The translations under genes were made by a program, and so were the position numbers. Below are positions 12,419 to 41,600 of a DNA stretch of 64,000 bases, in pieces. Source of the stretch: Auanema rhodensis (lineage: Eukaryota > Animalia > Nematoda); the NCBI GenBank assembly GCA_964057225.1, contig OZ059899.1:16678001-16742000 (forward strand), in the 5' to 3' direction. A model generated the notes under the pieces. That model made no database searches and was not told the DNA's origin. It saw nothing but the letters and a program-made list of their open reading frames with translations. Positions within the stretch are counted from its first letter, which is position 1. Each line of letters begins with the position of its first letter.

Positions 12419-16254
<3,836 letters not shown>

Positions 16255-17170: not shown

Positions 17171-17346
17171 TACTCGAAGATGTACAAATTGTATCAAAGT
17201 TCCAATTCTAATAAATTATTTTGTTACATGCTCAGAAATAAAGAAAATTAAATACAATATTTTACTTCTATGAAACTACAAACATCAACTATCAAGCCGC
17301 ATGATCGTTGCCAAAACTTTCTACTTATACGTCAGAAACCACGTAT

Positions 17347-18091: not shown

Positions 18092-18515
18092 ACCTAAATT
18101 TCTGAATATGATCGAATCCATGAAGAGAAAGGAAAAGCCAAAATAAGAAAGTAATCTTTTTAACACGATAATAGTAAAAAATAAACATTTTCAAATTAAA
18201 AACATATGTACTTAAACAATATAATTTGAAATTGAGCATTACTTAAATAATATAATCCTTGAAAAGGAATGGAGAAAAAATAACATAACCAATAAAAAAT
18301 CAAAATGAAAAATACCTCAAAGCTATAGCATTTAGTGTATGACGTCTAAACGAAAATTTGACGTGAAATAAAAAATAAATCCGTAATTTAGGAATTTGTT
18401 GAAGAATGGCGCTAAATTCAAAAAATAACTACAATTTTTGATAATTTTATTAGCTTAAGATTTGGTTGTTTTTAATGTGGATATCAACTAATAAAGAACA
18501 TATTTAGAAGAAAAG

Positions 18516-19092: not shown

Positions 19093-19594
19093 GCACTAAG
19101 TGAAGCATTTAACATTCATCTTTACAAATTATCCCATTCAACTTCTTAATACGTTTGAAATGAATCCTAGCCTCCAACAATTATTTATTCTCCATAACTT
19201 TAACCTATTCTATAAAACTTGTAATTTCCTTCGTAGAAATTAATCTTAAATAAATATTTTTAAATAGTTTATAAGTTATTAAATGTGATATATAATTATA
19301 ATAGTTTTACGTTTCAATCATCAACGCACACGAAAGTATTATTACTAACCTAACCAAATCGAAGATAACTAAATGAACTTATATTTAGTATTAAAAAGTT
19401 TTTTTGTATTATCACCATAATAATAAAAATTGAAAAAACATTTTTCATAACATTGTTCATATTTGATTTTATAACAAACAAACCGCTAATCTTTACAATC
19501 ACATTTAAAATGATGATCGAAGTTTGATCCATTTTAGAATAACGAATCTCAAAGCACGGTTGAAATAGAACGTAAGTTACGAAATACATTATAG

Positions 19595-19765: not shown

Positions 19766-20060
19766 CAACTAGTAAACCGAATTTTTGATTTTCAGTAGAG
19801 CGCGACAAGTAACAGAAGTGCTCTCTGGTATGATTTTGAAGAAAAGTTTGATTAACAACAGTAACCTATGTTATTTGGAACTTAAACATATAAAATCTAA
19901 CCCGTACAACCTGAAAAACTATTTGAAATTGGAAAATATTGTTATATTAAGGAAATATCACATCTTCAACATAGTCCCATAGTGGGGGTAATTTTGCCAT
20001 AAGATTTATAATAGATATCCGCTCTTCATTTTATCATATAGTTACTAATTATATATAAAT

Positions 20061-20132
20061 GTGGTCAATAGTCGAAAGGATAAGATGACGGACTGAGACT
20101 TAAACAGTCCAGGATCGAGTCCCCAAGGTTAC
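20061..20132 (+). pseudogene. Degenerate tRNA-like / Pol III element
   Basis: A-box-like TAGTCGAAAGG followed by ATAAG (Leu/Ser-type D arm, GTC/GAT stem), B-box-like GGATCGAGTCC, internal hairpin GGACTG-N9-CAGTCC, terminal GTGGTC/GGTTAC pairing. No canonical anticodon or T stem. Confidence 0.45.
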
Positions 20133-20169
20133 TAAATAAAACATAAGGTACGACATAGATTATAGAACC

Positions 20170-21069
20170 TGGAGCCACGGAATGAGTACTCACCGAAGGA
20201 GGAGAAACTGAAGGAGGAGAAACTGAAGGAGGAGGCACCGAACGAGGAGTCACCGAAGGAGGAGAAACTGAAGGAGGAGGCACCGAACGAGGAGTCACCG
20301 AAGGAGGAGAAAATGAAGGAGGAGGGACCGAACGAGGAGTCACCGAAGGAGGAGAAAATGAAGGAGGAGGGACCGAACGAGGAGTCACCGAAGGAGGAGA
20401 AACTGAAGGAGGAGGCACCGAACGAGGAGTCACCGAAGGAGGAGAAAATGAAGGAGGAGGGACCGAACGAGGAGTCACCGAAGGAGGAGAAAATGAAGGA
20501 GGAGGGACCGAACGAGGAGTCACCGAAGGAGGAGAAAATGTAGGAGGAGCCACCCGACCGGGAGAAACTGAAGGAGGAGCCACTCACGAAGGAGCCACCC
20601 GACCGGGAGAAACTGAAGGAGGAGCCACTCACGAAGGAGCCACCCGACCGGGAGAAACTGAAGGAGGAGCCACTCACGAAGGAGCCACCCGACCGGGAGA
20701 AACTGAAGGAGGAGCCACTCACGAAGGAGCCACCCGACCGGGAGAAACTGAAGGAGGAGCCACTAACGAAGGAGCCACCCGACCGGGAGAAACTGAAGGA
20801 GGAGCCACTAACGAAGGAGCCACCCGACCGGGAGAAACTGAAGGAGGAGCCACTGACGAAGGAGCCACCCGACCGGGAGAAACTGAAGGAGGAGCCACTG
20901 ACGAAGGAGCCACCCGACCTGGAGCAACTGAAGGAGGAGCCACTGACGAAGGAGCCACCCGACCTGGAGCAACTGACGGAGAAGCCACTGACGAAGGAGC
21001 CACCCGACCTGGAGCAACTGACGGAGAAGCCACTGAAGGAGGAGCCACTGAAGGAGGGGTCACCCGACC
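20170..21069 (+). repeat. Purine-rich minisatellite block 1: 45-bp units made of three 15-bp subunits, two subfamilies
   Basis: (ggagtcaccgaagga ggagaaaatgaagga ggaggcaccgaacga)n to ~20540, then (ggagccacccgaccg ggagaaactgaagga ggagccactNacgaa)n. Confidence 0.95.
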
Positions 21070-21131
21070 GTATTCAGATGTGTAGAATCTGATATTCCAA
21101 GTACGATTCGGCTGTGACTTTTCACTTTTCC
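21070..21131 (-). repeat. 62-bp inverted fragment of the 200-bp satellite
   Basis: Reverse complement of ggaaaagtgaaaagtcacagccgaatcgtacttggaatatcagattctacacatctgaatac. Confidence 0.93.
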
Positions 21132-21136
21132 TAACT

Positions 21137-21747
21137 GAAACTGAAGGAGGAGGCACCGAACGAGGAGTCACCGAAGGAGGAGAAAATGAAGGAGGAGGCA
21201 CCGAACGAGGAGTCACCGAAGGAGGAGAAAATGAAGGAGGAGGCACCGAACGAGGAGTCACCGAAGGAGGAGAAAATGAAGGAGGAGGCACCGAACGAGG
21301 AGTCACCGAAGGAGGAGAAAATGAAGGAGGAGGCACCGAACGAGGAGTCACCGAAGGAGGAGAAAATGAAGGAGGAGGCACCGAACGAGGAGTCACCGAA
21401 GGAGGAGAAAATGAAGGAGGAGCCACCCGACCGGGAGCCACTCACGAAGGAGCCACCCGACCGGGAGAAACTGAAGGAGGAGCCACTAACGAAGGAGCCA
21501 CCCGACCGGGAGAAACTGAAGGAGGAGCCACTGACGAAGGAGCCACCCGACCGGGAGAAACTGAAGGAGGAGCCACTAACGAAGGAGCCACCCGACCGGG
21601 AGAAACTGAAGGAGGAGCTACTGACGAAGGAGCCACCCGACCGGGAGAAACTGAAGGAGGAGCCACTGACGAAGGAGCCACCCGACCGGGAGCAACTGAC
21701 GGAGAAGCCACTGAAGGAGGAGCCACTGAAGGAGGGGTCACCCGACC
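21137..21747 (+). repeat. Purine-rich minisatellite block 2 (same two 45-bp subfamilies, same order)
   Basis: Same units and the same terminal junction (ggaggggtcacccgaccg|tattcagatg) as block 1. Confidence 0.95.
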
Positions 21748-22060
21748 GTATTCAGATGTGTAGAATCTGATATTCCAAGTACGATTCGGCTGTGACTTTT
21801 CACTTTTCCGGAAAACAGGTTTAGATCAACCCCATCCAAAAGATTTGTTCACAAAAAAGTTCAGGCTGTAGGCACGTTGTGTCCGGTGATTGTCAATTTT
21901 TCTCAAAAATCATCAACTATAATGAAAAATAAATAATCCTAAGTTGGGTATTCAGATGTGTAGAATCTGAATTACTTGGTGTGATTTGGCTGTGACTTCT
22001 CAGTTTTCCGGAAAAAGGTTTATACCAACCCCATCCAAAAGATTTGTTCACAAAAAAGTT
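21748..22060 (-). repeat. ~1.5 monomers of the 200-bp satellite in inverted orientation
   Basis: Reverse complement of the main-array monomer sequence. Confidence 0.95.
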
Positions 22061-22344
22061 GTTCCGATATTGAATTTATTTGATTTCTATTCACAAATTT
22101 ATTAAATTTTTTATTAAAATCCAGAAGAAAAAGAGGTCCTAGCCAAATTTAACGAGAAAATTCAGATTCTACACATCTGAATACATCAGTTTAGTTTAAT
22201 CTTAGTTAGAAAACGATTATTTTTTCTTTTTTAATTTGTTTCGAATAAACTTTGTTAACACGAAAATTCAAAATCGGACATTTATTTTGAAATTATTGTG
22301 AGATTGGTCTATGAACAACCGGAAATTTCAAAAATAGTTTTTGA

Positions 22345-22420
22345 AATTATACGCAGACGTGGACTTACGTGGAAAATGGTATATAAGGAATTGCTTTCCA
22401 TAAGAAAGCAGTCAGTCGAC
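22345..22420 (+). promoter_or_regulatory. Candidate Pol II core promoter
   Basis: Two ACGTGGA motifs (~22347, ~22357), TATATAAG at 22380-22387, Inr-like TCAGTC about 32 nt downstream. Confidence 0.5.
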
Positions 22421-22459
22421 ATGTCAACTTCGGAGCTGGTCTACTTCTTCCTTCCAGGA

Positions 22460-23250
22460 CCCTGACTCCTACTCTTCTGAAGTAGATGAGTGTGAACGGT
22501 GGGCCCGATCGTCTCTGCTCTTCAACTACTAAAGTGGTGTCTCGGTCCCAGCTATGAACGCTTCATGGAATCAACTTCGCTGGATCTTCATGGAATCAAC
22601 TTCGATCAACTTCGCTGCTTCTTCGTGGTATCATCTTCATTTTTTTTTGGTTATGTACTGTTTATTTCCAGATCCCTGACTCCTACTCTTCTGAAGTAGA
22701 TGAGTGTGAACGGTGGGCCCGATCGTCTCTGCTCTTCAACTACTAAAGTGGTGTCTCGGTCCCAGCTATGAACGCTTCATGGAATCAACTTCGCTGGATC
22801 TTCATGGAATCAACTTCGATCAACTTCGCTGCTTCTTCGTGGTATCATCTTCATTTTTTTTTGGTTATGTACTGTTTATTTCCAGATCCCTGACTCCTAC
22901 TCTTCTGAAGTAGATGAGTGTGAACGGTGGGCCCGATCGTCTCTGCTCTTCAACTACTAAAGTGGTGTCTCGGTCCCAGCTATGAACGCTTCATGGAATC
23001 AACTTCGCTGGATCTTCATGGAATCAACTTCGATCAACTTCGCTGCTTCTTCGTGGTATCATCTTCATTTTTTTTTGGTTATGTACTGTTTATTTCCAGA
23101 TCCCTGACTCCTACTCTTCTGAAGTAGATGAGTGTGAACGGTGGGCCCGATCGTCTCTGCTCTTCAACTACTAAAGTGGTGTCTCGGTCCAGCTATGAAC
23201 GCTTCATGGAATCAACTTCGCTGGATCTTCATGGAATCAACTTCGCTGCT
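22460..23250 (+). repeat. 214-bp tandem repeat, 3 identical copies plus a partial fourth
   Basis: Identical ORF-track peptides at 22499, 22713, 22927 (period 214); the fourth copy diverges after ~23190. Confidence 0.95.
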
Positions 23251-23350
23251 TCTTCGTGGTATCAACTTCGCTGGGTCTACGTGGTATCAACTTCGCTGGG
23301 TCTACGTGGTATCAACTTCGCTGGGTCTACGTGGTATCAACTTCGTTGCT
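23205..23350 (+). repeat. 25-bp minisatellite (ATCAACTTCGCTGGGTCTACGTGGT), ~5-6 copies with variants
   Basis: TCAACTTCG recurs at 23212, 23237, 23262, 23287, 23312, 23337. Confidence 0.9.
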
Positions 23351-23634
23351 TCGGCGGGACAAGAAATCTCGGAGTCTACTCAACTTCACTGGTTCTACTT
23401 TTTTTTTTTTCGGTAGGGCCAGTGAAGTTGAGGAGACTCCGGGACAATGGTACTAACCGAGTCATCGTGTTAGTGCCCACCGTCCCCGCTGGATCTTCGT
23501 CGTAACAACTTCGCTGGGTCTTCGTGGTATCAACTTCGCTGGGACAAGAAATCTCGGAGTCTACTCAACATCACTGATTATACTTTTTTTTCTGGATTTT
23601 AATAAAAAATTTAATAAATTTGTCTTTATAATAT

Positions 23635-26600
23635 TTTTTTTTTCATTATAGTTGATGATTTTTGAGAAAAATTGACAATCACCGGACACAACGTGCCTAC
23701 AGCCTGAACTTTTTTGTGAACAAATCTTGTGGATGGGGTTGATCTAAACCTGTTTTCCGGAAAACTGAGAAGTCACAGCCGAATCGTACTTGGAATATCA
23801 GATTCTACACATCTGAATACCCAACTTAGGATTATTTATTTTTCATTATTGTTGATGATTTTTGAGAAAAATTGACAATCACCGGACACAACGTGCCTAC
23901 AGCCTGAACTTTTTTGTGAACAAATCTTGTGGATGGGGTTGATATAAACCTGTTTTCCGGAAAACTGAGAAGTCACAGCCGAATCGTACTTGGAATATCA
24001 GATTCTACAGATCTGAATACCCAACTTAGGATTATTTATTTTTCATTATTGTTGATGATTTTTGAGAAAAAGGAACATTCACCGAGCACAACGTGCCTAC
24101 AGCCTGAACTTTTTTGTGAACAAATCTTTTGGATGGGGTTGATATAAACTTTTTTTCCGGAAAACTAAGAAGTCACAGCCAAATCGTACTTGGAATATCA
24201 GATTCTACACATCTGAATACCCAACTTAGGATTATTTATTTTTCATTATAGTTGATGATTTTTGAGAAAAATTGACAATCACCGGACACAACGTGCCTAC
24301 AGCCTGAACTTTTTTGTGAACAAAACTTGTGGATGTGGTTGATCTAAACCTTTTTTCCGGAAAACTGAGAAGTCACAGCCAAATCTTACTCGGAATATCA
24401 GATTCTACACATCTGAATACCCAACTTAGGTTTATTTATTTTTTATTATAGTTGATGATTTTTGAGAAAAATTGACAATCACCGGACACAACGTGCCTAC
24501 AGCCTGAACTTTTTTGTGAACAAATCTTGTGGATGGGGTTGAGATAAACCTTTTTTCCGAAAAACTGAGAAGTCACAGCCAAATCTTATTCGGAATATCA
24601 GATTCTACACATCTGAATACCCAACTTAGGATTATTTATTTTTCATTATTGTTGATGATTTTTGAGAAAAAGGAACATTCACCGAGCACAACGTGCCTAC
24701 AGCCTGAACTTTTTTGTGAACAAATCTTTTGGATGGGGTTGATATAAACTTTTTTTCCGGAAAACTAAGAAGTCACAGCCAAATCACAGCAAGTAATTCA
24801 GATTCTCCACATCTGAATACCCAACTTAGGATTATTTATTTTTCATTATTGTTGATGATTTTTGAGAAAAATTGACAATCACCGGACACAACGTGCCTAC
24901 AGCCTGAACTTTTTTGTGAACAAATCTTGTGGATGGGGTTGATATAAACCTGTTTTCCGGAAAACTGAGAAGTCACAGCCGAATCGTACTTGGAATATCA
25001 GATTCTACAGATCTGAATACCCAACTTAGGATTATTTATTTTTCATTATTGTTGATGATTTTTGAGAAAAAGGAACATTCACCGAGCACAACGTGCCTAC
25101 AGCCTGAACTTTTTTGTGAACAAATCTTTTGGATGGGGTTGATATAAACTTTTTTTCCGGAAAACTAAGAAGTCACAGCCAAATCGTACTTGGAATATCA
25201 GATTCTACACATCTGAATACCCAACTTAGGATTATTTATTTTTCATTATAGTTGATGATTTTTGAGAAAAATTGACAATCACCGGACACAACGTGCCTAC
25301 AGCCTGAACTTTTTTGTGAACAAAACTTGTGGATGTGGTTGATCTAAACCTTTTTTCCGGAAAACTGAGAAGTCACAGCCAAATCTTACTCGGAATATCA
25401 GATTCTACACATCTGAATACCCAACTTAGGTTTATTTATTTTTTATTATAGTTGATGATTTTTGAGAAAAATTGACAATCACCGGACACAACGTGCCTAC
25501 AGCCTGAACTTTTTTGTGAACAAATCTTGTGGATGGGGTTGAGATAAACCTTTTTTCCGAAAAACTGAGAAGTCACAGCCAAATCTTATTCGGAATATCA
25601 GATTCTACACATCTGAATACCCAACTTAGGATTATTTATTTTTCATTATTGTTGATGATTTTTGAGAAAAAGGAACATTCACCGAGCACAACGTGCCTAC
25701 AGCCTGAACTTTTTTGTGAACAAATCTTTTGGATGGGGTTGATATAAACTTTTTTTCCGGAAAACTAAGAAGTCACAGCCAAATCACAGCAAGTAATTCA
25801 GATTCTCCACATCTGAATACCCAACTTAGGATTACTTATTTTTCATTATAGTTGATGATTTTTGAGAAAAATTGACAATCACCGGACACAACGTGCCTAC
25901 AGCCTGAACTTTTTTGTGAACAAATCTTTTGGATGGGGTTGATATAAACTTTTTTTCCGGAAAACTAAGAAGTCACAGCCAAATCGTACTTGGAATATCA
26001 GATTCTACACATCTGAATACCCAACTTAGGATTATTTATTTTTCATTATAGTTGATGATTTTTGAGAAAAATTGACAATCACCGGACACAACGTGCCTAC
26101 AGCCTGAACTTTTTTGTGAACAAATCTTGATTCTACACATCTGAATACCCAACTTAGGATTATTTATTTTTCATTATAGTTGATGATTTTTGAGAAAAAT
26201 TGACAATCACCGGACACAACGTGCCTACAGCCTGAACTTTTTTGTGAACAAAACTTGTGGATGTGGTTGATCTAAACCTTTTTTCCGGAAAACTGAGAAG
26301 TCACAGCCAAATCTTACTCGGAATATCAGATTCTACACATCTGAATACCCAACTTAGGAATATTTATTTTTCATTATAGTTGATGATTTTTGAGAAAAAT
26401 TGACAATCACCGGACACAACGTGCCTACAGCCTGAACTTTTTTGTGAACAAAACTTGTGGATGTGGTTGATCTAAACCTTTTTTCCGGAAAACTGAGAAG
26501 TCACAGCCAAATCTTACTCGGAATATCAGATTCTACACATCTGAATACCCAACTTAGGATTATTTATTTTTCATTATAGTTGATGATTTTTGAGAAAAAT

Positions 26601-29600
26601 TGACAATCACCGGACACAACGTGCCTACAGCCTGAACTTTTTTGTGAACAAATCTTGTGGATGGGGTTGAGATAAACCTTTTTTCCGAAAAACTGAGAAG
26701 TCACAGCCAAATCACACCAAGTAATTCAGATTCTCCACATCTGAATACCCAACTTAGGATTATTTATTTTTCATTATTGTTGATGATTTTTGAGAAAAAG
26801 GAACATTCACCGAGCACAACGTGCCTACAGCCTGAACTTTTTTGTGAACAAATCTTTTGGATGGGGTTGATATAAACTTTTTTTCCGGAAAACTAAGAAG
26901 TCACAGCCAAATCACAGCAAGTAATTCAGATTCTCCACATCTGAATACCCAACTTAGGATTATTTATTTTTCATTATAGTTGATGATTTTTGAGAAAAAT
27001 TGACAATCACCGGACACAACGTGCCTACAGCCTGAACTTTTTTGTGAACAAATCTTGATTCTACACATCTGAATACCCAACTTAGGATTATTTATTTTTC
27101 ATTATAGTTGATGATTTTTGAGAAAAATTGACAATCACCGGACACAACGTGCCTACAGCCTGAACTTTTTTGTGAACAAAACTTGTGGATGGGGTTGATC
27201 TAAACCTTTTCTCCGGAAAACTGAGAAGTCACAGCCAAATCTTACTCGGAATATCAGATTCTACACATCTGAATACCCAACTTAGGTTTATTTATTTTTT
27301 ATTATAGTTGATGATTTTTGAGAAAAATTGACAATCACCGGACACAACGTGCCTACAGCCTGAACTTTTTTGTGAACAAATCTTGTGGATGGGGTTGAGA
27401 TAAACCTTTTTTCCGAAAAACTGAGAAGTCACAGCCAAATCTTATTCGGAATATCAGATTCTACACATCTGAATACCCAATTTAGGATTACTTATTTTTC
27501 ATTATAGTTGATGATTTTTGAGAAAAATTGACAATCACCGAGCACAACGTGCCTACAGCCTGAACTTTTTTGTGAACAAATCTTTTGGATGGGGTTGATA
27601 TAAACTTTTTTTCCGGAAAACTAAGAAGTCACAGCCAAATCACAGCAAGTAATTCAGATTCTCCACATCTGAATACCCAACTTAGGATTACTTATTTTTC
27701 ATTATAGTTGATGATTTTTGAGAAAAATTGACAATCACCGGACACAACGTGCCTACAGCCTGAACTTTTTTGTGAACAAATCTTTTGGATGGGGTTGATA
27801 TAAACTTTTTTTCCGGAAAACTAAGAAGTCACAGCCAAATCGTACTTGGAATATCAGATTCTACACATCTGAATACCCAACTTAGGATTATTTATTTTTC
27901 ATTATAGTTGATGATTTTTGAGAAAAATTGACAATCACCGGACACAACGTGCCTACAGCCTGAACTTTTTTGTGAACAAATCTTGATTCTACACATCTGA
28001 ATACCCAACTTAGGATTACTTATTTTTCATTATAGTTGATGATTTTTGAGAAAAATTGACAATCACCGGACACAACGTGCCTACAGCCTGAACTTTTTTG
28101 TGAACAAAACTTGTGGATGTGGTTGATCTAAACCTTTTTTCCGGAAAACTGAGAAGTCACAGCCAAATCTTACTCGGAATATCAGATTCTACACATCTGA
28201 ATACCCAACTTAGGTTTATTTATTTTTTATTATAGTTGATGATTTTTGAGAAAAATTGACAATCACCGGACACAACGTGCCTACAGCCTGAACTTTTTTG
28301 TGAACAAATCTTTTGGATGGGGTTGATATAAACTTGTTTTCCGGAAAACTGAGAAGTCACAGCCAAATCTTACTCGGAATATCAGATTCTACACATCTGA
28401 ATACCCAACTTAGGATTATTTATTTTTCATTATAGTTGATGATTTTTGAGAAAAATTGACAATCACCGGACACAACGTGCCTACAGCCTGAACTTTTTTG
28501 TGAACAAATCTTGTGGATGGGGTTGAGATAAACCTTTTTTCCGAAAAACTGAGAAGTTACAGCCGAATCACACCAAGTAATTCAGATTCTACACATCTGA
28601 ATACCCAACTTAGGATTATTTATTTTTTATTATAGTTGATGATTTTTGAGAAAAATTGACAATCACCGGACACAACGTGCCTACAGCCTGAACTTTTTTG
28701 TGAACAAATCTTGTGGATGGGGTTGAGATAAACCTTTTTTCCGAAAAACTGAGAAGTTACAGCCGAATCACACCAAGTAATTCAGATTCTACACATCTGA
28801 ATACCCAACTTAGGATTATTTATTTTTTATTATAGTTGATGATTTTTGAGAAAAATTGACAATCACCGGACACAACGTGCCTACAGCCTGAACTTTTTTG
28901 TGAACAAATCTTGTGGATGGGGTTGAGATAAACCTTTTTTCCGAAAAACTGAGAAGTTACAGCCGAATCACACCAAGTAATTCAGATTCTACACATCTGA
29001 ATACCCAACTTAGGATTATTTATTTTTTATTATAGTTGATGATTTTTGAGAAAAATTGACAATCACCGGACACAACGTGCCTACAGCCTGAACTTTTTTG
29101 TGAACAAATCTTTTGGATGGGGTTGATATAAACTTGTTTTCCGGAAAACTGAGAAGTCACAGCCAAATCTTACTCGGAATATCAGATTCTACACATCTGA
29201 ATACCCAACTTAGGATTATTTATTTTTCATTATAGTTGATGATTTTTGAGAAAAATTGACAATCACCGGACACAACGTGCCTACAGCCTGAACTTTTTTG
29301 TGAACAAATCTTGTGGATGGGGTTGAGATAAACCTTTTTTCCGAAAAACTGAGAAGTTACAGCCGAATCACACCAAGTAATTCAGATTCTACACATCTGA
29401 ATACCCAACTTAGGATTATTTATTTTTTATTATAGTTGATGATTTTTGAGAAAAATTGACAATCACCGGACACAACGTGCCTACAGCCTGAACTTTTTTG
29501 TGAACAAATCTTTTGGATGGGGTTGATCTAAACCTGTTTTCCGGAAAAGTGAAAAGTCACAGCCGAATCGTACTTGGAATATCAGATTCTACACATCTGA

Positions 29601-32600
29601 ATACCCAACTTAGGATTATTTATTTTTCATTATAGTTGATGATTTTTGAGAAAAATTGACAATCACCGGACACAACGTGCCTACAGCCTGAACTTTTTTG
29701 TGAACAAATCTTGTGGATGGGGTTGAGATAAACCTTTTTTCCGAAAAACTGAGAAGTTACAGCCGAATCACACCAAGTAATTCAGATTCTACACATCTGA
29801 ATACCCAACTTAGGATTATTTATTTTTTATTATAGTTGATGATTTTTGAGAAAAATTGACAATCACCGGACACAACGTGCCTACAGCCTGAACTTTTTTG
29901 TGAACAAATCTTGTGGATGGGGTTGAGATAAACCTTTTTTCCGAAAAACTGAGAAGTTACAGCCGAATCACACCAAGTAATTCAGATTCTACACATCTGA
30001 ATACCCAACTTAGGATTATTTATTTTTTATTATAGTTGATGATTTTTGAGAAAAATTGACAATCACCGGACACAACGTGCCTACAGCCTGAACTTTTTTG
30101 TGAACAAATCTTTTGGATGGGGTTGATATAAACTTGTTTTCCGGAAAACTGAGAAGTCACAGCCAAATCTTACTCGGAATATCAGATTCTACACATCTGA
30201 ATACCCAACTTAGGATTATTTATTTTTCATTATAGTTGATGATTTTTGAGAAAAATTGACAATCACCGGACACAACGTGCCTACAGCCTGAACTTTTTTG
30301 TGAACAAATCTTGTGGATGGGGTTGAGATAAACCTTTTTTCCGAAAAACTGAGAAGTTACAGCCGAATCACACCAAGTAATTCAGATTCTACACATCTGA
30401 ATACCCAACTTAGGATTATTTATTTTTTATTATAGTTGATGATTTTTGAGAAAAATTGACAATCACCGGACACAACGTGCCTACAGCCTGAACTTTTTTG
30501 TGAACAAATCTTGTGGATGGGGTTGAGATAAACCTTTTTTCCGAAAAACTGAGAAGTTACAGCCGAATCACACCAAGTAATTCAGATTCTACACATCTGA
30601 ATACCCAACTTAGGATTATTTATTTTTTATTATAGTTGATGATTTTTGAGAAAAATTGACAATCACCGGACACAACGTGCCTACAGCCTGAACTTTTTTG
30701 TGAACAAATCTTGTGGATGGGGTTGAGATAAACCTTTTTTCCGAAAAACTGAGAAGTTACAGCCGAATCACACCAAGTAATTCAGATTCTACACATCTGA
30801 ATACCCAACTTAGGATTATTTATTTTTTATTATAGTTGATGATTTTTGAGAAAAATTGACAATCACCGGACACAACGTGCCTACAGCCTGAACTTTTTTG
30901 TGAACAAATCTTTTGGATGGGGTTGATATAAACTTGTTTTCCGGAAAACTGAGAAGTCACAGCCGAATCTTACTCGGAATATCAGATTCTACACATCTGA
31001 ATACCCAACTTAGGATTATTTATTTTTCATTATAGTTGATGATTTTTGAGAAAAATTGACAATCACCGGACACAACGTGCCTACAGCCTGAACTTTTTTG
31101 TGAACAAATCTTGTGGATGGGGTTGATCTAAACCTTTTTTCCGGAAAACTGAGAAGTCACAGCCGAATCTTATTTGGAATATCAGATTCTACACATCTGA
31201 ATACCCAACTTAGGATTATTTACTTTTCATTATAGTTGATGATTTTTGAGAAAAATTGACAATCACCGGACACAACGTGCCTACAGCCTGAACTTTTTTG
31301 TGAACAAATCTTTTGGATGGGGTTGGTATAAACCTTTTTCCGGAAAACTGAGAAGTCACAGCCAAATCACACCAAGTAATTCAGATTCTACACATCTGAA
31401 TACCCAACTTAGGATTATTTATTTTTCATTATAGTTGATGATTTTTGAGAAAAATTGACAATCACCGGACACAACGTGCCTACAGCCTGAACTTTTTTGT
31501 GAACAAATCTTGTGGATGGGGTTGATATAAACCTGTTTTCCGGAAAACTGAGAAGTCACAGCCGAATCTTACTCGGAATATCAGATTCTACACATCTGAA
31601 TACCCAACTTAGGATTATTTATTTTTCATTATAGTTGATGATTTTTGAGAAAAATTGACAATCACCGGACACAACGTGCCTACAGCCTGAACTTTTTTGT
31701 GAACAAATCTTTTGGATGGGGTTGATATAAACTTGTTTTCCGGAAAACTGAGAAGTCACAGCCAAATCTTATTCGGAATATCAGATTCTACACATCTGAA
31801 TACCCAACTTAGGATTATTTATTTTTCATTATAGTTGATGATTTTTGAGAAAAATTGACAATCACCGGACACAACGTGCCTACAGCCTGAACTTTTTTGT
31901 GAACAAATCTTGTGGATGGGGTTGGTATAAACCTTTTTCCGGAAAACTGAGAAGTCACAGCCGAATCTTACTCGGAATATCAGATTCTACACATCTGAAT
32001 ACCCAACTTAGGATTATTTATTTTTCATTATAGTTGATGATTTTTGAGAAAAATTGACAATCACCGGACACAACGTGCCTACAGCCTGAACTTTTTTGTG
32101 AACAAATCTTGTGGATGGGGTTGATATAAACTTGTTTTCCGGAAAACTGAGAAGTCACAGCCGAATCTTACTCGGAATATCAGATTCTCCACATCTGAAT
32201 ACCCAACTTAGGATTATTTATTTTTCATTATTGTTGATGATTATTGAGAAAAATTGACAATCACCGGACACAATGTGCCTACAGCCTGAACTTTTTTGTG
32301 AACAAATCTTTTGGATGGGGTTGATATAAACTTGTTTTCCGGAAAACTGAGAAGTTACAGCCGAATCGTATTTGGAATATCAGATTCTACACATCTGAAT
32401 ACCCAACTTAGGATTATTTATTTTTCATTATAGTTGATGATTTTTGAGAAAAATTGACAATCACCGGACACAACGTGCCTACAGCCTGAACTTTTTTGTG
32501 AACAAATCTTGTGGATGGGGTTGGTATAAACCTTTTTTCCGGAAAACTGAGAAGTCACAGCCAAATCTTATTCGGAATATCAGATTCTACACATCTGAAT

Positions 32601-35600
32601 ACCCAACTTAGGATTATTTATTTTTCATTATAGTTGATGATTTTTGAGAAAAATTGACAATCACCGGACACAACGTGCCTACAGCCTGAACTTTTTTGTG
32701 AACAAATCTTGTGGATGGGGTTGGTATAAACCTTTTTCCGGAAAACTGAGAAGTCACAGCCAAATCTTATTCGGAATATCAGATTCTACACATCTGAATA
32801 CCCAACTTAGGATTATTTATTTTTCATTATAGTTGATGATTTTTGAGAAAAATTGACAATCACCGGACACAACGTGCCTACAGCCTGAACTTTTTTGTGA
32901 ACAAATCTTGTGGATGGGGTTGGTATAAACCTTTTTCCGGAAAACTGAGAAGTCACAGCCAAATCACACCAAGTAATTCAGATTCTACACATCTGAATAC
33001 CCAACTTAGGATTATTTATTTTTCATTATAGTTGATGATTTTTGAGAAAAATTGACAATCACCGGACACAACGTGCCTACAGCCTGAACTTTTTTGTGAA
33101 CAAATCTTGTGGATGGGGTTGATATAAACCTGTTTTCCGGAAAACTGAGAAGTCACAGCCGAATCTTACTCGGAATATCAGATTCTACACATCTGAATAC
33201 CCAACTTAGGATTATTTATTTTTCATTATAGTTGATGATTTTTGAGAAAAATTGACAATCACCGGACACAACGTGCCTACAGCCTGAACTTTTTTGTGAA
33301 CAAATCTTTTGGATGGGGTTGATATAAACCTGTTTTCCGGAAAACTGAGAAGTCACAGCCGAATCTTACTCGGAATATCAGATTCTACACATCTGAATAC
33401 CCAACTTAGGATTATTTATTTTTCATTATAGTTGATGATTTTTGAGAAAAATTGACAATCACCGGACACAACGTGCCTACAGCCTGAACTTTTTTGTGAA
33501 CAAATGTTGTGGATGGGGTTGATATAAACCTTTTTTCCGGAAAACTGAGAAGTCACAGCCAAATCACACCAAGTAATTCAGATTCTCCACATCTGAATAC
33601 CCAACTTAGGATTATTTATTTTTCATTATAGTTGATGATTATTGAGAAAAATTGACAATCACCGGACACAACGTGCCTACAGCCTGAACTTTTTTGTGAA
33701 CAAATGTTGTGGATGGGGTTGATATAAACCTTTTTTCCGGAAAACTGAGAAGTCACAGCCAAATCACACCAAGTAATTCAGATTCTCCACATCTGAATAC
33801 CCAACTTAGGATTATTTATTTTTCATTATTGTTGATGATTATTGAGAAAAATTGACAATCACCGGACACAATGTGCCTACAGCCTGAACTTTTTTGTGAA
33901 CAAATCTTGTGGATGGGGTTGGTATAAACCTTTTTCCGGAAAACTGAGAAGTCACAGCCAAATCACACCAAGTAATTCAGATTCTACACATCTGAATACC
34001 CAACTTAGGATTATTTATTTTTCATTATAGTTGATGATTATTGAGAAAAATTGACAATCACCGGACACAACGTGCCTACAGCCTGAACTTTTTTGTGAAC
34101 AAATCTTGTGGATGGGGTTGATATAAACCTGTTTTCCGGAAAACTGAGAAGTCACAGCCGAATCTTACTCGGAATATCAGATTCTACACATCTGAATACC
34201 CAACTTAGGATTATTTATTTTTCATTATAGTTGATGATTTTTGAGAAAAATTGACAATCACCGGACACAACGTGCCTACAGCCTGAACTTTTTTGTGAAC
34301 AAATCTTGTGGATGGGGTTGGTATAAACCTTTTTCCGGAAAACTGAGAAGTCACAGCCAAATCACACCAAGTAATTCAGATTCTACACATCTGAATACCC
34401 AACTTAGGATTATTTATTTTTCATTATAGTTGATGATTATTGAGAAAAATTGACAATCACCGGACACAACGTGCCTACAGCCTGAACTTTTTTGTGAACA
34501 AATCTTGTGGATGGGGTTGGTATAAACCTTTTTCCGGAAAACTGAGAAGTCACAGCCAAATCACACCAAGTAATTCAGATTCTACACATCTGAATACCCA
34601 ACTTAGGATTATTTATTTTTCATTATAGTTGATGATTATTGAGAAAAATTGACAATCACCGGACACAACGTGCCTACAGCCTGAACTTTTTTGTGAACAA
34701 ATCTTGTGGATGGGGTTGATATAAACCTGTTTTCCGGAAAACTGAGAAGTCACAGCCGAATCTTACTCGGAATATCAGATTCTACACATCTGAATACCCA
34801 ACTTAGGATTATTTATTTTTCATTATAGTTGATGATTTTTGAGAAAAATTGACAATCACCGGACACAATGTGCCTACAGCCTGAACTTTTTTGTGAACAA
34901 ATCTTTTGGATGGGGTTGATATAAACTTTTTTTCCGAAAAACTGAGAAGTCACAGCCAAATCACACCAAGTAATTCAGATTCTCCACATCTGAATACCCA
35001 ACTTAGGATTATTTATTTTTCATTATTGTTGATGATTTTTAAGAAAAATTGACAATCACCGGACACAACGTGCCTACAGCCTGAACTTTTTTGTGAACAA
35101 ATCTTGTGGATGGGGTTGGTATAAACCTTTTTCCGGAAAACTGAGAAGTCACAGCCAAATCACACCAAGTAATTCAGATTCTCCACATCTGAATACCCAA
35201 CTTAGGATTATTTATTTTTCATTATTGTTGATGATTTTTAAGAAAAATTGACAATCACCGGACACAACGTGCCTACAGCCTGAACTTTTTTGTGAACAAA
35301 TCTTGTGGATGGGGTTGATCTAAACCTGTTTTCCGGAAAACTGAGAAGTCACAGCCGAATCGTACTTGGAATATCAGATTCTACACATCTGAATACCCAA
35401 CTTAGGATTATTTATTTTTCATTATAGTTGATGATTTTTGAGAAAAATTGACAATCACCGGACACAACGTGCCTACAGCCTGAACTTTTTTGTGAACAAA
35501 TCTTTTGGATGGGGTTGATATAAACTTTTTTTCCGAAAAACTGAGAAGTCACAGCCAAATCACACCAAGTAATTCAGATTCTCCACATCTGAATACCCAA

Positions 35601-38600
35601 CTTAGGATTATTTATTTTTCATTATTGTTGATGATTATTGAGAAAAATTGACAATCACCGGACACAACGTGCCTACAGCCTGAACTTTTTTGTGAACAAA
35701 TCTTGTGGATGGGGTTGATCTAAACCTGTTTTCCGGAAAACTGAGAAGTCACAGCCGAATCGTACTTGGAATATCAGATTCTACACATCTGAATACCCAA
35801 CTTAGGATTATTTATTTTTCATTATTGTTGATGATTTTTGAGAAAAATTGACAATCACCGGACACAACGTGCCTACAGCCTGAACTTTTTTGTGAACAAA
35901 TCTTGTGGATGGGGTTGATCTAAACCTGTTTTCCGGAAAACTGAGAAGTCACAGCCGAATCGTACTTGGAATATCAGATTCTACACATCTGAATACCCAA
36001 CTTAGGATTATTTATTTTTCATTATTGTTGATGATTATTGAGAAAAATTGACAATCACCGGACACAACGTGCCTACAGCCTGAACTTTTTTGTGAACAAA
36101 TCTTTTGGATGGGGTTGATATAAACTTTTTTTCCGAAAAACTGAGAAGTCACAGCCAAATCACACCAAGTAATTCAGATTCTACACATCTGAATACCCAA
36201 CTTAGGATTATTTATTTTTCATTATTGTTGATGATTATTGAGAAAAATTGACAATCACCGGACACAACGTGCCTACAGCCTGAACTTTTTTGTGAACAAA
36301 TCTTTTGGATGGGGTTGATCTAAACCTGTTTTCCGGAAAACTGAGAAGTCACAGCCGAATCGTTCTTGGAATATCAGATTCTACACATCTGAATACCCAA
36401 CTTAGGATTATTTATTTTTCATTATTGTTGATGATTATTGAGAAAAATTGACAATCACCGGACACAACGTGCCTACAGCCTGAACTTTTTTGTGAACAAA
36501 TCTTTTGGATGGGGTTGATATAAACTTTTTTTCCGAAAAACTGAGAAGTCACAGCCAAATCACACCAAGTAATTCAGATTCTACACATCTGAATACCCAA
36601 CTTAGGATTATTTATTTTTCATTATTGTTGATGATTATTGAGAAAAATTGACAATCACCGGACACAACGTGCCTACAGCCTGAACTTTTTTGTGAACAAA
36701 TCTTTTGGATGGGGTTGATCTAAACCTGTTTTCCGGAAAACTGAGAAGTCACAGCCGAATCGTTCTTGGAATATCAGATTCTACACATCTGAATACCCAA
36801 CTTAGGATTATTTATTTTTCATTATTGTTGATGATTATTGAGAAAAATTGACAATCACCGGACACAACGTGCCTACAGCCTGAACTTTTTTGTGAACAAA
36901 TCTTTTGGATGGGGTTGATATAAACTTTTTTTCCGAAAAACTGAGAAGTCACAGCCAAATCACACCAAGTAATTCAGATTCTACACATCTGAATACCCAA
37001 CTTAGGATTATTTATTTTTCATTATTGTTGATGATTATTGAGAAAAATTGACAATCACCGGACACAACGTGCCTACAGCCTGAACTTTTTTGTGAACAAA
37101 TCTTTTGGATGGGGTTGATATAAACTTTTTTTCCGAAAAACTGAGAAGTCACAGCCAAATCACACCAAGTAATTCAGATTCTACACATCTGAATACCCAA
37201 CTTAGGATTATTTATTTTTCATTATTTTTGATGATTATTGAGAAAAATTGACAATCACCGGACACAACGTGCCTACAGCCTGAACTTTTTTGTGAACAAA
37301 TCTTTTGGATGGGGTTGATCTAAACCTGTTTTCCGGAAAACTGAGAAGTCACAGCCGAATCGTACTTGGAATATCAGATTCTACACATCTGAATACCCAA
37401 CTTAGGATTATTTATTTTTCATTATTGTTGATGATTATTGAGAAAAATTGACAATCACCGGACACAACGTGCCTACAGCCTGAACTTTTTTGTGAACAAA
37501 TCTTTTGGATGGGGTTGGTATAAACCTTTTTCCGGAAAACTGAGAAGTCACAGCCAAATCACACCAAGTAATTCAGATTCTACACATCTGAATACCCAAC
37601 TTAGGATTATTTATTTTTCATTATTGTTGATGATTATTGAGAAAAATTGACAATCACCGGACACAACGTGCCTACAGCCTGAACTTTTTTGTGAACAAAT
37701 CTTGTGGATGGGGTTGAGATAAACTTTTTTTCCGAAAAACTGAGAAGTCACAGCCAAATCACACCAAGTAATTCAGATTCTCCACATCTGAATACCCAAC
37801 TTAGGATTATTTATTTTTCATTATTGTTGATGATTATTGAGAAAAATTGACAATCACCGGACACAACGTGCCTACAGCCTGAACTTTTTTGTGAACAAAT
37901 CTTTTGGATGGGGTTGATCTAAACCTGTTTTCCGGAAAACTGAGAAGTCACAGCCGAATCGTACTTGGAATATCAGATTCTACACATCTGAATACCCAAC
38001 TTAGGATTATTTATTTTTCATTATTGTTGATGATTATTGAGAAAAATTGACAATCACCGGACACAACGTGCCTACAGCCTGAACTTTTTTGTGAACAAAT
38101 CTTTTGGATGGGGTTGATCTAAACCTGTTTTCCGGAAAACTGAGAAGTCACAGCCGAATCGTACTTGGAATATCAGATTCTACACATCTGAATACCCAAC
38201 TTAGGATTATTTATTTTTCATTATTGTTGATGATTATTGAGAAAAATTGACAATCACCGGACACAACGTGCCTACAGCCTGAACTTTTTTGTGAACAAAT
38301 CTTTTGGATGGGGTTGATCTAAACCTGTTTTCCGGAAAACTGAGAAGTCACAGCCGAATCGTACTTGGAATATCAGATTCTACACATCTGAATACCCAAC
38401 TTAGGATTATTTATTTTTCATTATTGTTGATGATTATTGAGAAAAATTGACAATCACCGGACACAACGTGCCTACAGCCTGAACTTTTTTGTGAACAAAT
38501 CTTTTGGATGGGGTTGATCTAAACCTGTTTTCCGGAAAACTGAGAAGTCACAGCCGAATCGTTCTTGGAATATCAGATTCTACACATCTGAATACCCAAC

Positions 38601-41600
38601 TTAGGATTATTTATTTTTCATTATTGTTGATGATTATTGAGAAAAATTGACAATCACCGGACACAACGTGCCTACAGCCTGAACTTTTTTGTGAACAAAT
38701 CTTTTGGATGGGGTTGATCTAAACCTGTTTTCCGGAAAACTGAGAAGTCACAGCCGAATCGTACTTGGAATATCAGATTCTACACATCTGAATACCCAAC
38801 TTAGGATTATTTATTTTTCATTATTGTTGATGATTATTGAGAAAAATTGACAATCACCGGACACAACGTGCCTACAGCCTGAACTTTTTTGTGAACAAAT
38901 CTTTTGGATGGGGTTGATCTAAACCTGTTTTCCGGAAAACTGAGAAGTCACAGCCGAATCGTACTTGGAATATCAGATTCTACACATCTGAATACCCAAC
39001 TTAGGATTATTTATTTTTCATTATTTTTGATGATTATTGAGAAAAATTGACAATCACCGGACACAACGTGCCTACAGCCTGAACTTTTTTGTGAACAAAT
39101 CTTTTGGATGGGGTTGGTATAAACCTTTTTCCGGAAAACTGAGAAGTCACAGCCAAATCACACCAAGTAATTCAGATTCTACACATCTGAATACCCAACT
39201 TAGGATTATTTATTTTTCATTATTGTTGATGATTATTGAGAAAAATTGACAATCACCGGACACAACGTGCCTACAGCCTGAACTTTTTTGTGAACAAATC
39301 TTTTGGATGGGGTTGATCTAAACCTGTTTTCCGGAAAACTGAGAAGTCACAGCCGAATCGTACTTGGAATATCAGATTCTACACATCTGAATACCCAACT
39401 TAGGATTATTTATTTTTCATTATTTTTGATGATTTTTGAGAAAAAGGAACATTCACCGAGCACAACGTGCCTACAGCCTGAACTTTTTTGTGAACAAATC
39501 TTTTGGATGGGGTTGATCTAAACCTGTTTTCCGGAAAACTGAGAAGTCACAGCCGAATCGTACTTGGAATATCAGATTCTACACATCTGAATACCCAACT
39601 TAGGATTATTTATTTTTCATTATAGTTGATGATTTTTGAGAAAAATTGACAATCATCGGACACAACGTGCCTACAGCCTGAACTTTTTTGTGAACAAAAC
39701 TTTTGGATGGGGTTGATCTAAACCTGTTTTCCGGAAAACTGAGAAGTCACAGCCGAATCGTACTTGGAATATCAGATTCTACACATCTGAATACCCAACT
39801 TAGGATTATTTATTTTTCATTATAGTTGATGATTTTTGAGAAAAATTGACAATCACCGGACACAACGTGCCTACAGCCTGAACTTTTTTGTGAACAAATC
39901 TTTTGGATGGGGTTGGTATAAACCTTTTTCCGGAAAACTGAGAAGTCACAGCCAAATCACACCAAGTAATTCAGATTCTCCACATCTGAATACCCAACTT
40001 AGGATTATTTATTTTTCATTATTGTTGATGATTATTGAGAAAAATTGACAATCACCGGACACAACGTGCCTACAGCCTGAACTTTTTTGTGAACAAATCT
40101 TTTGGATGGGGTTGATCTAAACCTGTTTTCCGGAAAACTGAGAAGTCACAGCCGAATCGTTCTTGGAATATCAGATTCTACACATCTGAATACCCAACTT
40201 AGGATTATTTATTTTTCATTATTGTTGATGATTATTGAGAAAAATTGACAATCACCGGACACAACGTGCCTACAGCCTGAACTTTTTTGTGAACAAATCT
40301 TTTGGATGGGGTTGATCTAAACCTGTTTTCCGGAAAACTGAGAAGTCACAGCCGAATCGTACTTGGAATATCAGATTCTACACATCTGAATACCCAACTT
40401 AGGATTATTTAATTTTCATTATTGTTGATGATTATTGAGAAAAATTGACAATCACCGGACACAACGTGCCTACAGCCTGAACTTTTTTGTGAACAAATCT
40501 TTTGGATGGGGTTGGTATAAACCTTTTTCCGGAAAACTGAGAAGTCACAGCCAAATCACACCAAGTAATTCAGATTCTACACATCTGAATACCCAACTTA
40601 GGATTATTTATTTTTCATTATTGTTGATGATTATTGAGAAAAATTGACAATCACCGGACACAACGTGCCTACAGCCTGAACTTTTTTGTGAACAAATCTT
40701 GTGGATGGGGTTGAGATAAACTTTTTTTCCGAAAAACTGAGAAGTCACAGCCAAATCACACCAAGTAATTCAGATTCTCCACATCTGAATACCCAACTTA
40801 GGATTATTTATTTTTCATTATTGTTGATGATTATTGAGAAAAATTGACAATCACCGGACACAACGTGCCTACAGCCTGAACTTTTTTGTGAACAAATCTT
40901 TTGGATGGGGTTGATCTAAACCTGTTTTCCGGAAAACTGAGAAGTCACAGCCGAATCGTACTTGGAATATCAGATTCTACACATCTGAATACCCAACTTA
41001 GGATTATTTATTTTTCATTATTTTTGATGATTATTGAGAAAAATTGACAATCACCGGACACAACGTGCCTACAGCCTGAACTTTTTTGTGAACAAATCTT
41101 TTGGATGGGGTTGGTATAAACCTTTTTCCGGAAAACTGAGAAGTCACAGCCAAATCACACCAAGTAATTCAGATTCTACACATCTGAATACCCAACTTAG
41201 GATTATTTATTTTTCATTATTGTTGATGATTATTGAGAAAAATTGACAATCACCGGACACAACGTGCCTACAGCCTGAACTTTTTTGTGAACAAATCTTG
41301 TGGATGGGGTTGAGATAAACTTTTTTTCCGAAAAACTGAGAAGTCACAGCCAAATCACACCAAGTAATTCAGATTCTCCACATCTGAATACCCAACTTAG
41401 GATTATTTATTTTTCATTATTGTTGATGATTATTGAGAAAAATTGACAATCACCGGACACAACGTGCCTACAGCCTGAACTTTTTTGTGAACAAATCTTT
41501 TGGATGGGGTTGATCTAAACCTGTTTTCCGGAAAACTGAGAAGTCACAGCCGAATCGTACTTGGAATATCAGATTCTACACATCTGAATACCCAACTTAG

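What the first reader, a model, noticed from the sequence alone, without database searches (positions are those of the whole stretch)
22345..23620. Candidate boundary-associated lncRNA gene: TATA, repeated exon/intron units, ~17 TCAACTTCG motifs, poly(A) signal
Seen: two ACGTGGA motifs plus TATATAAG and TCAGTC. Each 214-bp unit parses as a 170-nt exon plus a 44-nt GTATCA...TTTCCAG intron (e.g. 22628-22671), matching local intron size, and the exon has stops in all three frames. It carries small hairpins (ACTC-CTACT/AGTAG-GAGT; ACTACT/AGTGGT). TCAACTTCG recurs about 17 times, and the right inverted repeat supplies AATAAA. Transcription would point into the satellite. Inference: a modular repeat-scaffold lncRNA (roX/Xist-like logic) at the edge of satellite or eliminated DNA, possibly marking it for silencing or elimination. 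This is my best candidate for a novel system in the window.
Basis: partly seen in the sequence, partly recalled or inferred. Interest (0 to 1): 0.75.

Follow-up and report, generated by a model that had tools for sequence, protein, structure and literature searches.

The report
Repeat-built head module of a satellite
This 1.5-kb stretch is a real, non-coding, repeat-built module at the head of a 200-bp satellite array in the nematode Auanema rhodense. It has four promoter-bearing copies, but nothing shows that it is a spliced lncRNA, and it is not at a DNA-elimination breakpoint.

Summary
The genome is the published Auanema rhodense germline assembly, and the window is chr6:16.678-16.742 Mb.

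The element is non-coding and built from a 25-bp repeat and its higher-order forms (214, 250, 342 and 367 bp). The number and size of these forms differ between copies. It lies between oppositely oriented 200-bp satellite DNA.

It is a closed, low-copy family of three full copies and two stubs. All five abut the same 200-bp satellite. Four keep an identical TATA box region.

- The 170-nt 'exon' folds no better than shuffles.
- An intron-like GT..AG parse appears in 19% of shuffled units.
- The motif count follows from tandem repetition.
- The window has no elimination motif (SFE).
- The array is a ~73-kb interstitial satellite. About 95 kb of ordinary DNA separates it from the eliminated terminal block (AT-1).

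Left open: a conserved TATA/Inr core promoter pointing into the array, and a very stable hairpin module (-78 kcal/mol). Transcription into the satellite is therefore possible but could not be tested here.

Verdict: real structure, modest interest; the elimination role is not supported.

The parts
19775..20176 (+). Dispersed repeat 'X' (context, left flank). At least 33 copies genome-wide at 68-86% identity (most 74-79%). Several lie within 2 kb of a 200-bp satellite array.
20191..21735 (+). GA-rich 15/45-bp minisatellite between X and the inverted satellite. It carries a 62-nt satellite fragment at 21070-21131. The same X, minisatellite, satellite(-) order is seen at chr6:14.896 Mb.
21748..22060 (-). 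About 1.5 units of the 200-bp satellite in inverted orientation (left arm of the fold-back).
22093..22133 (.). Left arm of the 41-nt inverted repeat. It is an inverted copy of the element's right junction. It is absent from the chr4 copy.
22132..22184 (+). Fragment of a satellite unit in + orientation that runs straight into the leader. It is about 125 nt long in the chr4 copy.
22185..22345 (+). Unique AT-rich leader: 99% identical in the chr6:16.446 copy and 92% in the chr4 copy. No detectable similarity to the satellite.
22357..22417 (+). Promoter-like core: ACGTGGA x2 (10-nt direct repeat), TATATAAG at 22380, and TCAGTC with its A at 22414. The 21-mer ACGTGGAAAATGGTATATAAG is identical in all four promoter-bearing copies and occurs nowhere else in the genome.
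22452..23245 (+). 214-bp higher-order repeat x3.7. Each unit is about 125 nt of unique-like sequence, then 25/35-bp sub-repeats, then a 44-nt T-rich spacer (the proposed intron). The chr4 copy has a 250-bp unit.
22628..22671 (+). Proposed 44-nt intron, GTATCA..TTTCCAG. The same sequence recurs at 22842-22885 and 23056-23099. Its size fits local introns (43-49 nt), but the parse is not above chance.
23207..23345 (+). 25-bp minisatellite TGGTATCAACTTCGCTGGGTCTACG x5.6, the basic building block of the whole element.
23346..23486 (+). Hairpin module: 32-nt arms around a T12 loop, plus a second 12-bp hairpin. Energy -78.1 kcal/mol, z = -10.6. One copy here, three at chr6:16.446 and two on chr4, all about 97% identical.
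23487..23582 (+). 25-bp repeats x2.3, then a single (unpaired) copy of the hairpin's left arm ending in a T8 run.
23583..23623 (.). Right arm of the 41-nt inverted repeat, with AATAAA at 23601 and 23613.
23635..64000 (+). 200-bp satellite array. It continues to chr6:16,774,344 (about 73 kb in all) and is + wherever sampled. It ends at a Pao/BEL-type retroelement.

Best explanation
The stretch is the non-coding head (junction) module of an interstitial 200-bp satellite array. It is not a gene tied to DNA elimination.

Shown:
- It is built from a 25-bp minisatellite and its higher-order repeats. These have grown and shrunk independently in each copy, as slippage or unequal exchange would produce.
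- Its hairpin is an inverted duplication of its own 3' tail.
- The two chr6 copies sit as the centre of a fold-back: satellite(-), junction, element, junction, satellite(+).

Inferred:
- The module spread together with its array by segmental or inverted duplication. This gave three full copies (two on chr6, one on chr4), with truncated copies at the far ends of two arrays.
- It carries a conserved TATA/Inr-type core promoter aimed at the array, so some read-through transcription is plausible. The regular exon/intron design, a scaffold function and any role in programmed DNA elimination have no support.
For: Species and position:
- The assembly size (180,911,798 bases) equals the 180.9 Mb of the A. 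rhodense preprint.
- The preprint's chr5 break site (~16,502,174) is found at C6:16,502,175 as a GGCTCAGCC-centred palindrome.

Repeat turnover:
- Unit size is 214 bp in both chr6 copies and 250 bp on chr4.
- The tail module occurs once here, 3.0 times (342 bp) at chr6:16.446 and 2.1 times (367 bp) on chr4.

No coding capacity:
- 16-22 stops per + frame and no shared ORF.
- No protein homologues for two ORFs.
- No Rfam family at gathering score.

Fold-back anatomy:
- 268-nt satellite arms (94% complementary) plus the 41-nt inverted repeat.
- chr4 copy: a 1.8-kb inverted array, then the element, then an 8.8-kb array.

Closed low-copy family:
- Leader, tail and promoter box occur only at these loci.
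- A stub lies at the distal end of the chr6:16.448-16.509 array, and a fragment at the distal end of the chr4 array.

Not an elimination boundary:
- No SFE in the window.
- The array ends at 16,774,344, and samples from 16.777 to 16.85 Mb are non-repetitive.
- The published AT-1 probe hits the 176-bp satellite sampled at 16.89 and 17.5 Mb; that satellite is seen from 16.87 Mb on.

Weakness of the gene model:
- Exon fold z = 0.02.
- An intron-like parse arises in 19% of shuffles.
- The 'intron' is as conserved as the 'exon'.
Against: - The promoter-like core is identical over 21 nt in all four promoter-bearing copies, including a stub that is only about 75% identical overall. TATA-to-Inr spacing is kept to within one base.
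- All copies point towards the nearer chromosome end.
- In the three full copies the promoter points into the array. In the stub it points away from the array, into unique DNA.
- The hairpin module is about 97% identical between chromosomes, while the flanking satellites are 84-88% identical.
- The three transition differences between the arms of the long hairpin, and one more in the second hairpin, all give G-U pairs on the + strand RNA. This is a weak hint only (p about 0.06).
- The 44-nt spacer matches the local intron size, and local donor sites are themselves weak.
- No expression data could be consulted, so a real transcript is not excluded.
Confidence: 0.55

Rival explanations
1. A genuine Pol II non-coding RNA gene family with four loci. 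The TATA/Inr promoter drives a transcript of about 1.2 kb through the 25-bp repeats and the hairpin module. It ends at the AATAAA in the right inverted repeat or reads on into the 200-bp array. This would work like a TERRA-type array transcript or a hairpin-RNA precursor. The reader's precise 170+44 splicing pattern is a narrower version of this idea, with about 0.1 probability.
For: - The core promoter is identical in four copies and unique to them.
- AATAAA is kept in all three full copies.
- The motifs show strong strand asymmetry: 17 of 17 are on +.
- The hairpin module is very stable and 97% conserved.
- The 44-nt spacer matches local intron size.
Against: - No expression evidence is available.
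- Module numbers are not conserved.
- The exon is unstructured.
- The intron parse is at chance level.
- The whole -110..+25 region of the stub is about 80% identical, so the perfect TATA run is only marginally unusual (about p 0.05 by my estimate).
- No covariation.
- No Rfam family.
- No complementarity to the satellite.
Confidence: 0.3
2. The central domain of a fold-back-type transposon (FB/Tetris-like). Its inverted terminal arms are made of 200-bp repeats, and one arm has expanded into a satellite.
For: - Inverted satellite arms flank a 1.45-kb centre in all three full copies.
- Copies lie on two chromosomes.
- The satellite itself is linked to another dispersed repeat, X.
Against: - Only three full copies exist.
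- The 41-nt inverted repeat occurs nowhere else.
- The arms are extremely unequal: 1-1.5 units against 300-360 units.
- The left breakpoints differ between copies, and the chr4 copy lacks the left inverted repeat.
- No target-site duplication or defined termini were found.
- No transposase ORF.
Confidence: 0.12
3. A marker or organiser of programmed DNA elimination at a retained/eliminated border.
For: Only context: the species eliminates 61% of its germline genome, mostly satellites.
Against: - No GGC-N3-GCC-centred palindrome in the window.
- The preprint reports exactly four break sites per autosome, all at transitions to the large repeat blocks.
- The terminal block (AT-1, 176-bp satellite) begins about 95 kb beyond this array.
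- Other arrays of the same satellite lie up to 2 Mb further inside gene-rich DNA.
Confidence: 0.02
4. A decayed or orphan protein-coding gene with repeated exons.
For: - An ATG lies 7 nt after the Inr-like site.
- The + strand has fewer stops than the - strand.
Against: - That ATG frame stops after 14 codons.
- Unit lengths of 214, 170 and 25 nt are not multiples of 3.
- The chr4 copy has frame-breaking indels.
- No homologues.
Confidence: 0.01

Closest known systems
Fold-back transposons and their satellites (Drosophila FB elements; 'Tetris' of D. virilis). Comparison from my own knowledge.
   Same: Arrays of tandem repeats in inverted orientation flank a non-repetitive centre. One arm can expand into a satellite.
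   Different: Only three full copies. No defined termini, target-site duplications or transposase. The arms are grossly unequal. The left junction differs between copies, which looks more like rearrangement and duplication than transposition.
Fold-back or inverted-duplication scars at satellite borders of this same genome
   Same: There is an orientation switch of a satellite, with a short inverted copy of the junction. The internal hairpin is an inverted copy of the element's own tail.
   Different: Here the switch encloses a 1.45-kb structured module with a promoter-like core, and the module has been copied to other loci.
TERRA-type promoters: subtelomeric 61-29-37-bp repeat promoters that read into telomeric arrays. 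Comparison from my own knowledge.
   Same: A promoter region associated with short tandem repeats sits at the head of a long array and points into it.
   Different: No transcript is shown here. The array is an interstitial 200-bp satellite, not a telomere. The promoter is of TATA type rather than a CpG island.
roX/Xist-like modular lncRNAs
   Same: Repeated sequence modules on one strand of a non-coding locus.
   Different: The modules here are 95-100% identical recent duplicates whose number varies between copies. There is no structure signal in the module and no evidence of RNA.
SFE break sites of A. rhodense and O. tipulae (bioRxiv 10.64898/2026.08.27.747507; PMC13060919).
   Same: Location at a gene-to-satellite transition in a species with programmed DNA elimination.
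   Different: The defining 29-nt GGC/GCC-centred palindrome is absent, and the satellite is not one of the eliminated blocks.

Membership tests
Spliced Pol II lncRNA gene | Core promoter (TATA plus initiator at the proper spacing) conserved among copies | tested here: met
   TATATAAG at 22380 and TCAGTC with its A at 22414. The 21-mer is identical in four loci and unique to them.
Spliced Pol II lncRNA gene | Direct evidence of a transcript (RNA-seq, cDNA) | not testable with these tools
   No expression data could be reached. Two ORF searches found nothing, which says little.
Spliced Pol II lncRNA gene | Splice sites better than chance, or kept under divergence | tested here: inconclusive
   GT..AG is kept in all units, but the units are 95-100% identical. 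19% of shuffled units give such a parse. Size fits local introns of 43-49 nt. A C at -4 of the acceptor appears in none of 14 locally inferred introns.
Spliced Pol II lncRNA gene | No coding capacity | tested here: met
   Stops in all six frames of the unit, no ORF shared between copies, no homologues.
Structured or modular RNA | Module folds better than shuffled sequence, with covariation | tested here: not met
   170-nt module: z = 0.02. The hairpin module has z = -10.6, but 0 of 51 pairs covary.
Known RNA families (Rfam 15) | Match at gathering score | tested here: not met
   None at gathering score. The hairpin gives only sub-threshold miRNA-precursor hits, 35 bits at most against cut-offs of 56-107 bits.
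Programmed-DNA-elimination break site (SFE) | 29-nt degenerate palindrome centred on GGC-N3-GCC | tested here: not met
   The window has three GGCNNNGCC sites, with 5-7 of 14 palindromic pairs, none near the boundary and at least one (15458-15466) inside the Lon protease gene. A relaxed scan found nothing. The positive control at C6:16,502,175 has 9 of 14 pairs.
Programmed-DNA-elimination break site (SFE) | Abuts a multi-megabase eliminated repeat block | tested here: not met
   The array is about 73 kb. Samples from 16.777 to 16.85 Mb are non-repetitive. The 176-bp AT-1 satellite is seen from 16.87 Mb on, and the published AT-1 probe matches it at 16.89 and 17.5 Mb.
Fold-back transposon | Inverted arms of tandem repeats around a central domain | tested here: met
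Fold-back transposon | Many dispersed copies with common termini and target-site duplications; a transposase in some copies | tested here: not met
   Three full copies. The inverted repeat is unique to these loci. Left breakpoints differ. No ORF.

The most novel reading that the evidence does not exclude
The module is a dedicated promoter cassette for an interstitial satellite. A TATA-driven transcript starts near 22414 and runs through the 25-bp repeats and one to three copies of a 32-bp-stem hairpin. It then continues into the 200-bp array. This would feed a small-RNA or heterochromatin pathway that keeps these retained, somatic-genome satellites silent. That would be a TERRA-like arrangement for an internal satellite, with its own hairpin-RNA source.
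Probability: 0.15. Interest if true: 0.6.

Novelty: new member of a known kind. Interest (0 to 1): 0.25.

Why it matters
[quoted passage not shown] What remains is a clean example of how a satellite head evolves: a 25-bp repeat, its higher-order repeats, a fold-back, and copying together with the array. There is also a small, testable question. Four loci keep an identical TATA-type core promoter at the edge of the same satellite; three of them aim it into their array and all carry a very stable hairpin, while the fourth, a truncated stub, points away from its array. Public RNA-seq and small-RNA data could settle that quickly. Only if transcripts are found would the locus become of wider interest for how retained satellites are handled in a genome that discards most of its repeats.

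Tried and rejected
- **Leader as a diverged satellite unit:** rejected. Alignment score 23 against 20.7 +/- 3.1 for shuffles.
- **Protein-coding reading:** no shared ORF. Two ORF searches in the 5.8-billion-protein collection were blank. Pfam finds nothing in the neighbouring minisatellite ORF.
- **Known RNA family:** none. No tRNA in window 1-24000.
- **High-copy transposon:** the leader, tail, inverted repeat and promoter box occur only at the family's own loci.
- **Small RNAs from the hairpin targeting the satellite:** no complementarity beyond 8-9-mers.
- **De novo palindrome scans for the break motif:** failed at first. The motif was then fixed from the preprint's chr5 coordinate.
- **Splice-site assessment from local genes:** my intron finder is crude and noisy. 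It shows only that local introns are 43-49 nt with weak donors.
- **Joined (spliced) model:** I did not build or search it.

Full report
**1. Observation**

The region reads as described.
- Tandem Repeats Finder gives a 214-bp unit x3.7 (22452-23245, 99% identical) and a 25-bp unit x5.6 (23207-23345) and x2.3 (23487-23543). The 200-bp satellite runs from 23635 to the end of the window.
- TCAACTTCG occurs exactly 17 times, all on the + strand, against 0.48 expected. All but the first (22424) lie inside the tandem repeats, so they are not independent events.
- The only two ACGTGGA in the window lie 10 nt apart at 22357 and 22367. They sit just upstream of TATATAAG at 22380 and TCAGTC at 22412.
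- The three proposed 44-nt introns are GTATCA...TTTCCAG at the stated coordinates. The 170-nt 'exon' has stops in all six frames.
- A 41-nt inverted repeat (22093-22133 / 23583-23623, 98% complementary) brackets the element. Its right arm carries two AATAAA. About 1.5 satellite units in inverted orientation lie at 21748-22060.

**2. Where this is**

- The genome has 180,911,798 bases, and the window is C7:16,678,001-16,742,000.
- The 2026 preprint on that species reports a 180.9-Mb germline assembly, elimination of 61% of the genome, and four break sites per autosome. Each break site carries a 29-nt palindromic SFE.
- The one break coordinate the preprint prints (chr5 ~16,502,174) falls on a GGCTCAGCC-centred degenerate palindrome at C6:16,502,175.
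- So the assembly is the same one. Ranking the contigs by size then makes C7 chromosome 6.

**3. Not an elimination border**

- The window holds no SFE-like site. The three GGCNNNGCC matches lie far from the boundary, have 5-7 of 14 palindromic pairs, and at least one (15458-15466) sits in the Lon protease gene. A relaxed scan finds nothing.
- Sampling along the chromosome shows mostly non-repetitive DNA from 14.0 to 16.66 Mb.
- The array of this window runs from 16,701,635 to 16,774,344 (about 73 kb, + wherever sampled). It ends at a Pao/BEL-type retroelement (DUF1759 Gag, E = 7e-24).
- Samples from 16.777 to 16.85 Mb are non-repetitive again. A 176-bp satellite is found from 16.87 Mb on, and a 351-bp one from 17.0 Mb.
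- The preprint's AT-1 FISH probe, which marks eliminated autosomal terminal repeats, matches the 176-bp satellite and not the 200-bp one.
- Earlier notes place break sites on this contig near 4.74 and 11.73 Mb (not re-tested).
- From all this I infer that the element lies in retained DNA, roughly 150 kb inside the terminal eliminated block. The 200-bp satellite is therefore an interstitial one.

**4. The family**

- A whole-genome search finds two more full copies. One is at chr6:16,446,027-16,447,992 (97-99% identical). The other is at C5 (chr4):5,871,082-5,872,829 on the minus strand (85-92% identical).
- There is a ~75%-identical stub at chr6:16,508,955-16,509,300, and a ~100-nt fragment at C5:5,862,064-5,862,160.
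- The 21-mer ACGTGGAAAATGGTATATAAG occurs exactly four times in the genome: in the three full copies and the stub.
- All five pieces abut the same 200-bp satellite.
- The stub sits at the distal end of the array that begins with the chr6:16.446 copy. The fragment sits at the distal end of the chr4 array, next to a tRNA-His gene.
- The family is nonetheless not a general feature of these arrays. At least 11 arrays exist. The one array whose two ends I could read (chr6:14.897-14.930 Mb) has no such element.

**5. Anatomy and turnover**

- The basic unit is the 25-mer TGGTATCAACTTCGCTGGGTCTACG.
- Each 214-bp unit consists of about 125 nt of unique-like sequence, then three 25/35-bp sub-repeats, then the T-rich 44-nt spacer.
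- On chr4 the unit is 250 bp, because it holds more 25-mers.
- The tail (25-mers plus hairpin module) is present once here, 3.0 times as a 342-bp repeat at chr6:16.446, and 2.1 times as a 367-bp repeat on chr4.
- The hairpin (23367-23444) is an inverted duplication of the element's own terminal sequence. That sequence occurs once more, unpaired, at 23544-23582.
- In the two chr6 copies the left inverted repeat, spacer and satellite(-) mirror the right junction.
- In the chr4 copy the left inverted repeat is absent. There, a 1.8-kb inverted array meets a partial + unit that runs straight into the leader.
- The homology between the two chr6 copies starts inside the inverted satellite stub, and that stub is part of a continuous 95%-identical alignment. 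So the fold-back predates their duplication.
- These are the marks of slippage, unequal exchange and fold-back rearrangement. They do not look like a conserved exon-intron design.

**6. Tests of the gene model**

- *Coding.* No ORF is shared between copies, and the ATG at 22421 is followed by a stop after 14 codons. Searches with two ORFs, given by reference and unspliced, found no relatives.
- *RNA families.* None at gathering score. The hairpin gives only sub-threshold hits to miRNA-precursor models.
The 141-nt hairpin module is exceptional (-78.1 kcal/mol, z = -10.6). Its six copies are about 97% identical and show no covariation. The few arm differences give G-U pairs on the + strand, a weak hint of an RNA-level reading (my estimate, p about 0.06).
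- *Splicing.* Likely real introns in the neighbouring genes are 43-49 nt with weak GTT/GTA donors, so the 44-nt size fits. But 19% of shuffled units yield an equivalent GT..YAG parse. The GT is part of the recurrent GGTATCA of the 25-mer. The 'intron' is as conserved as the 'exon', at about 95%.
- *Promoter.* The stub keeps the box, and the TATA-Inr spacing to within one base. However, the whole -110..+25 region of the stub is about 80% identical. The perfect 21-nt run is therefore only marginally unusual.
- *Link to the satellite.* Beyond the embedded satellite fragment, the element has no complementarity to the satellite.

**7. Reading**

- Most likely (0.55): a non-coding head or junction module of the 200-bp satellite, shaped by repeat turnover and fold-back duplication and copied along with its array. 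It carries a promoter-like core that may or may not fire.
- Second (0.30): a real TATA-driven non-coding transcript, TERRA-like or a hairpin-RNA source.
- A fold-back transposon proper is less likely (0.12), given three copies, no common termini and no transposase.
- A role in DNA elimination is very unlikely (0.02).
Related loci do exist, so that test was passed. The other half of the test, transcription and splicing, is still open.

Noticed in passing
window 19775-21735; L020:134-1480: A recurrent composite: dispersed repeat X (~400 bp), then a GA-rich 15/45-bp minisatellite, then the 200-bp satellite in (-) orientation. The minisatellite-satellite junction is at the same phase in both loci. 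X has a TATATAAA box. Pfam finds nothing in the 194-aa minisatellite ORF.
   Followed up: partly
genome-wide: The ~33 X copies show strand polarity by chromosome position. They are + beyond about 13 Mb and - below about 9 Mb on C1, C3, C4, C5, C6 and C7, so they point towards the nearer chromosome end. The exceptions are C6:12.93 Mb and the two C8 (X chromosome) copies near mid-chromosome. The promoter-bearing element copies also point outwards.
   Followed up: no
L080:445-4001 (chr6:16,774,345 on); L015:2065-3052 (C5:6.179 Mb): The same Pao/BEL-type LTR retroelement (Gag DUF1759, open for at least 550 codons in L080) ends two different 200-bp arrays, at different phases of the satellite unit.
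   Followed up: partly
window 19300-19562 and chr6:16,799,020-16,799,283: A 263-nt stretch is 100% identical about 101.7 kb downstream, followed there by an 86%-identical start of X. This is a possible large direct repeat bracketing the whole array region.
   Followed up: no
window 21070-21131: A 62-nt fragment of the 200-bp satellite is embedded inside the 45-bp minisatellite.
   Followed up: no
L082:3445-3516 (C5:5,861,944-5,862,015): A tRNA-His (GTG) gene lies directly beside the element fragment at the distal end of the chr4 array.
   Followed up: partly
window 1900-18200: The flanking genes are ordinary housekeeping genes: scramblase, Lon protease, a TPR protein and GRIM-19/NDUFA13. This fits retained, gene-rich DNA. 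The GGCTTAGCC at 15458-15466 is a chance core match inside the Lon protease gene.
   Followed up: partly
L071-L075 (chr6:16.87-16.945 Mb), L076-L079 (16.96-16.99 Mb), L056-L059: The terminal block is not uniform. The 176-bp satellite (AT-1) covers 16.87-16.945 Mb. Samples from 16.96 to 16.99 Mb are non-repetitive. Further out, the 351-bp satellite is found at 17.0, 19.0 and 21.0 Mb and the 176-bp one at 17.5 Mb.
   Followed up: no
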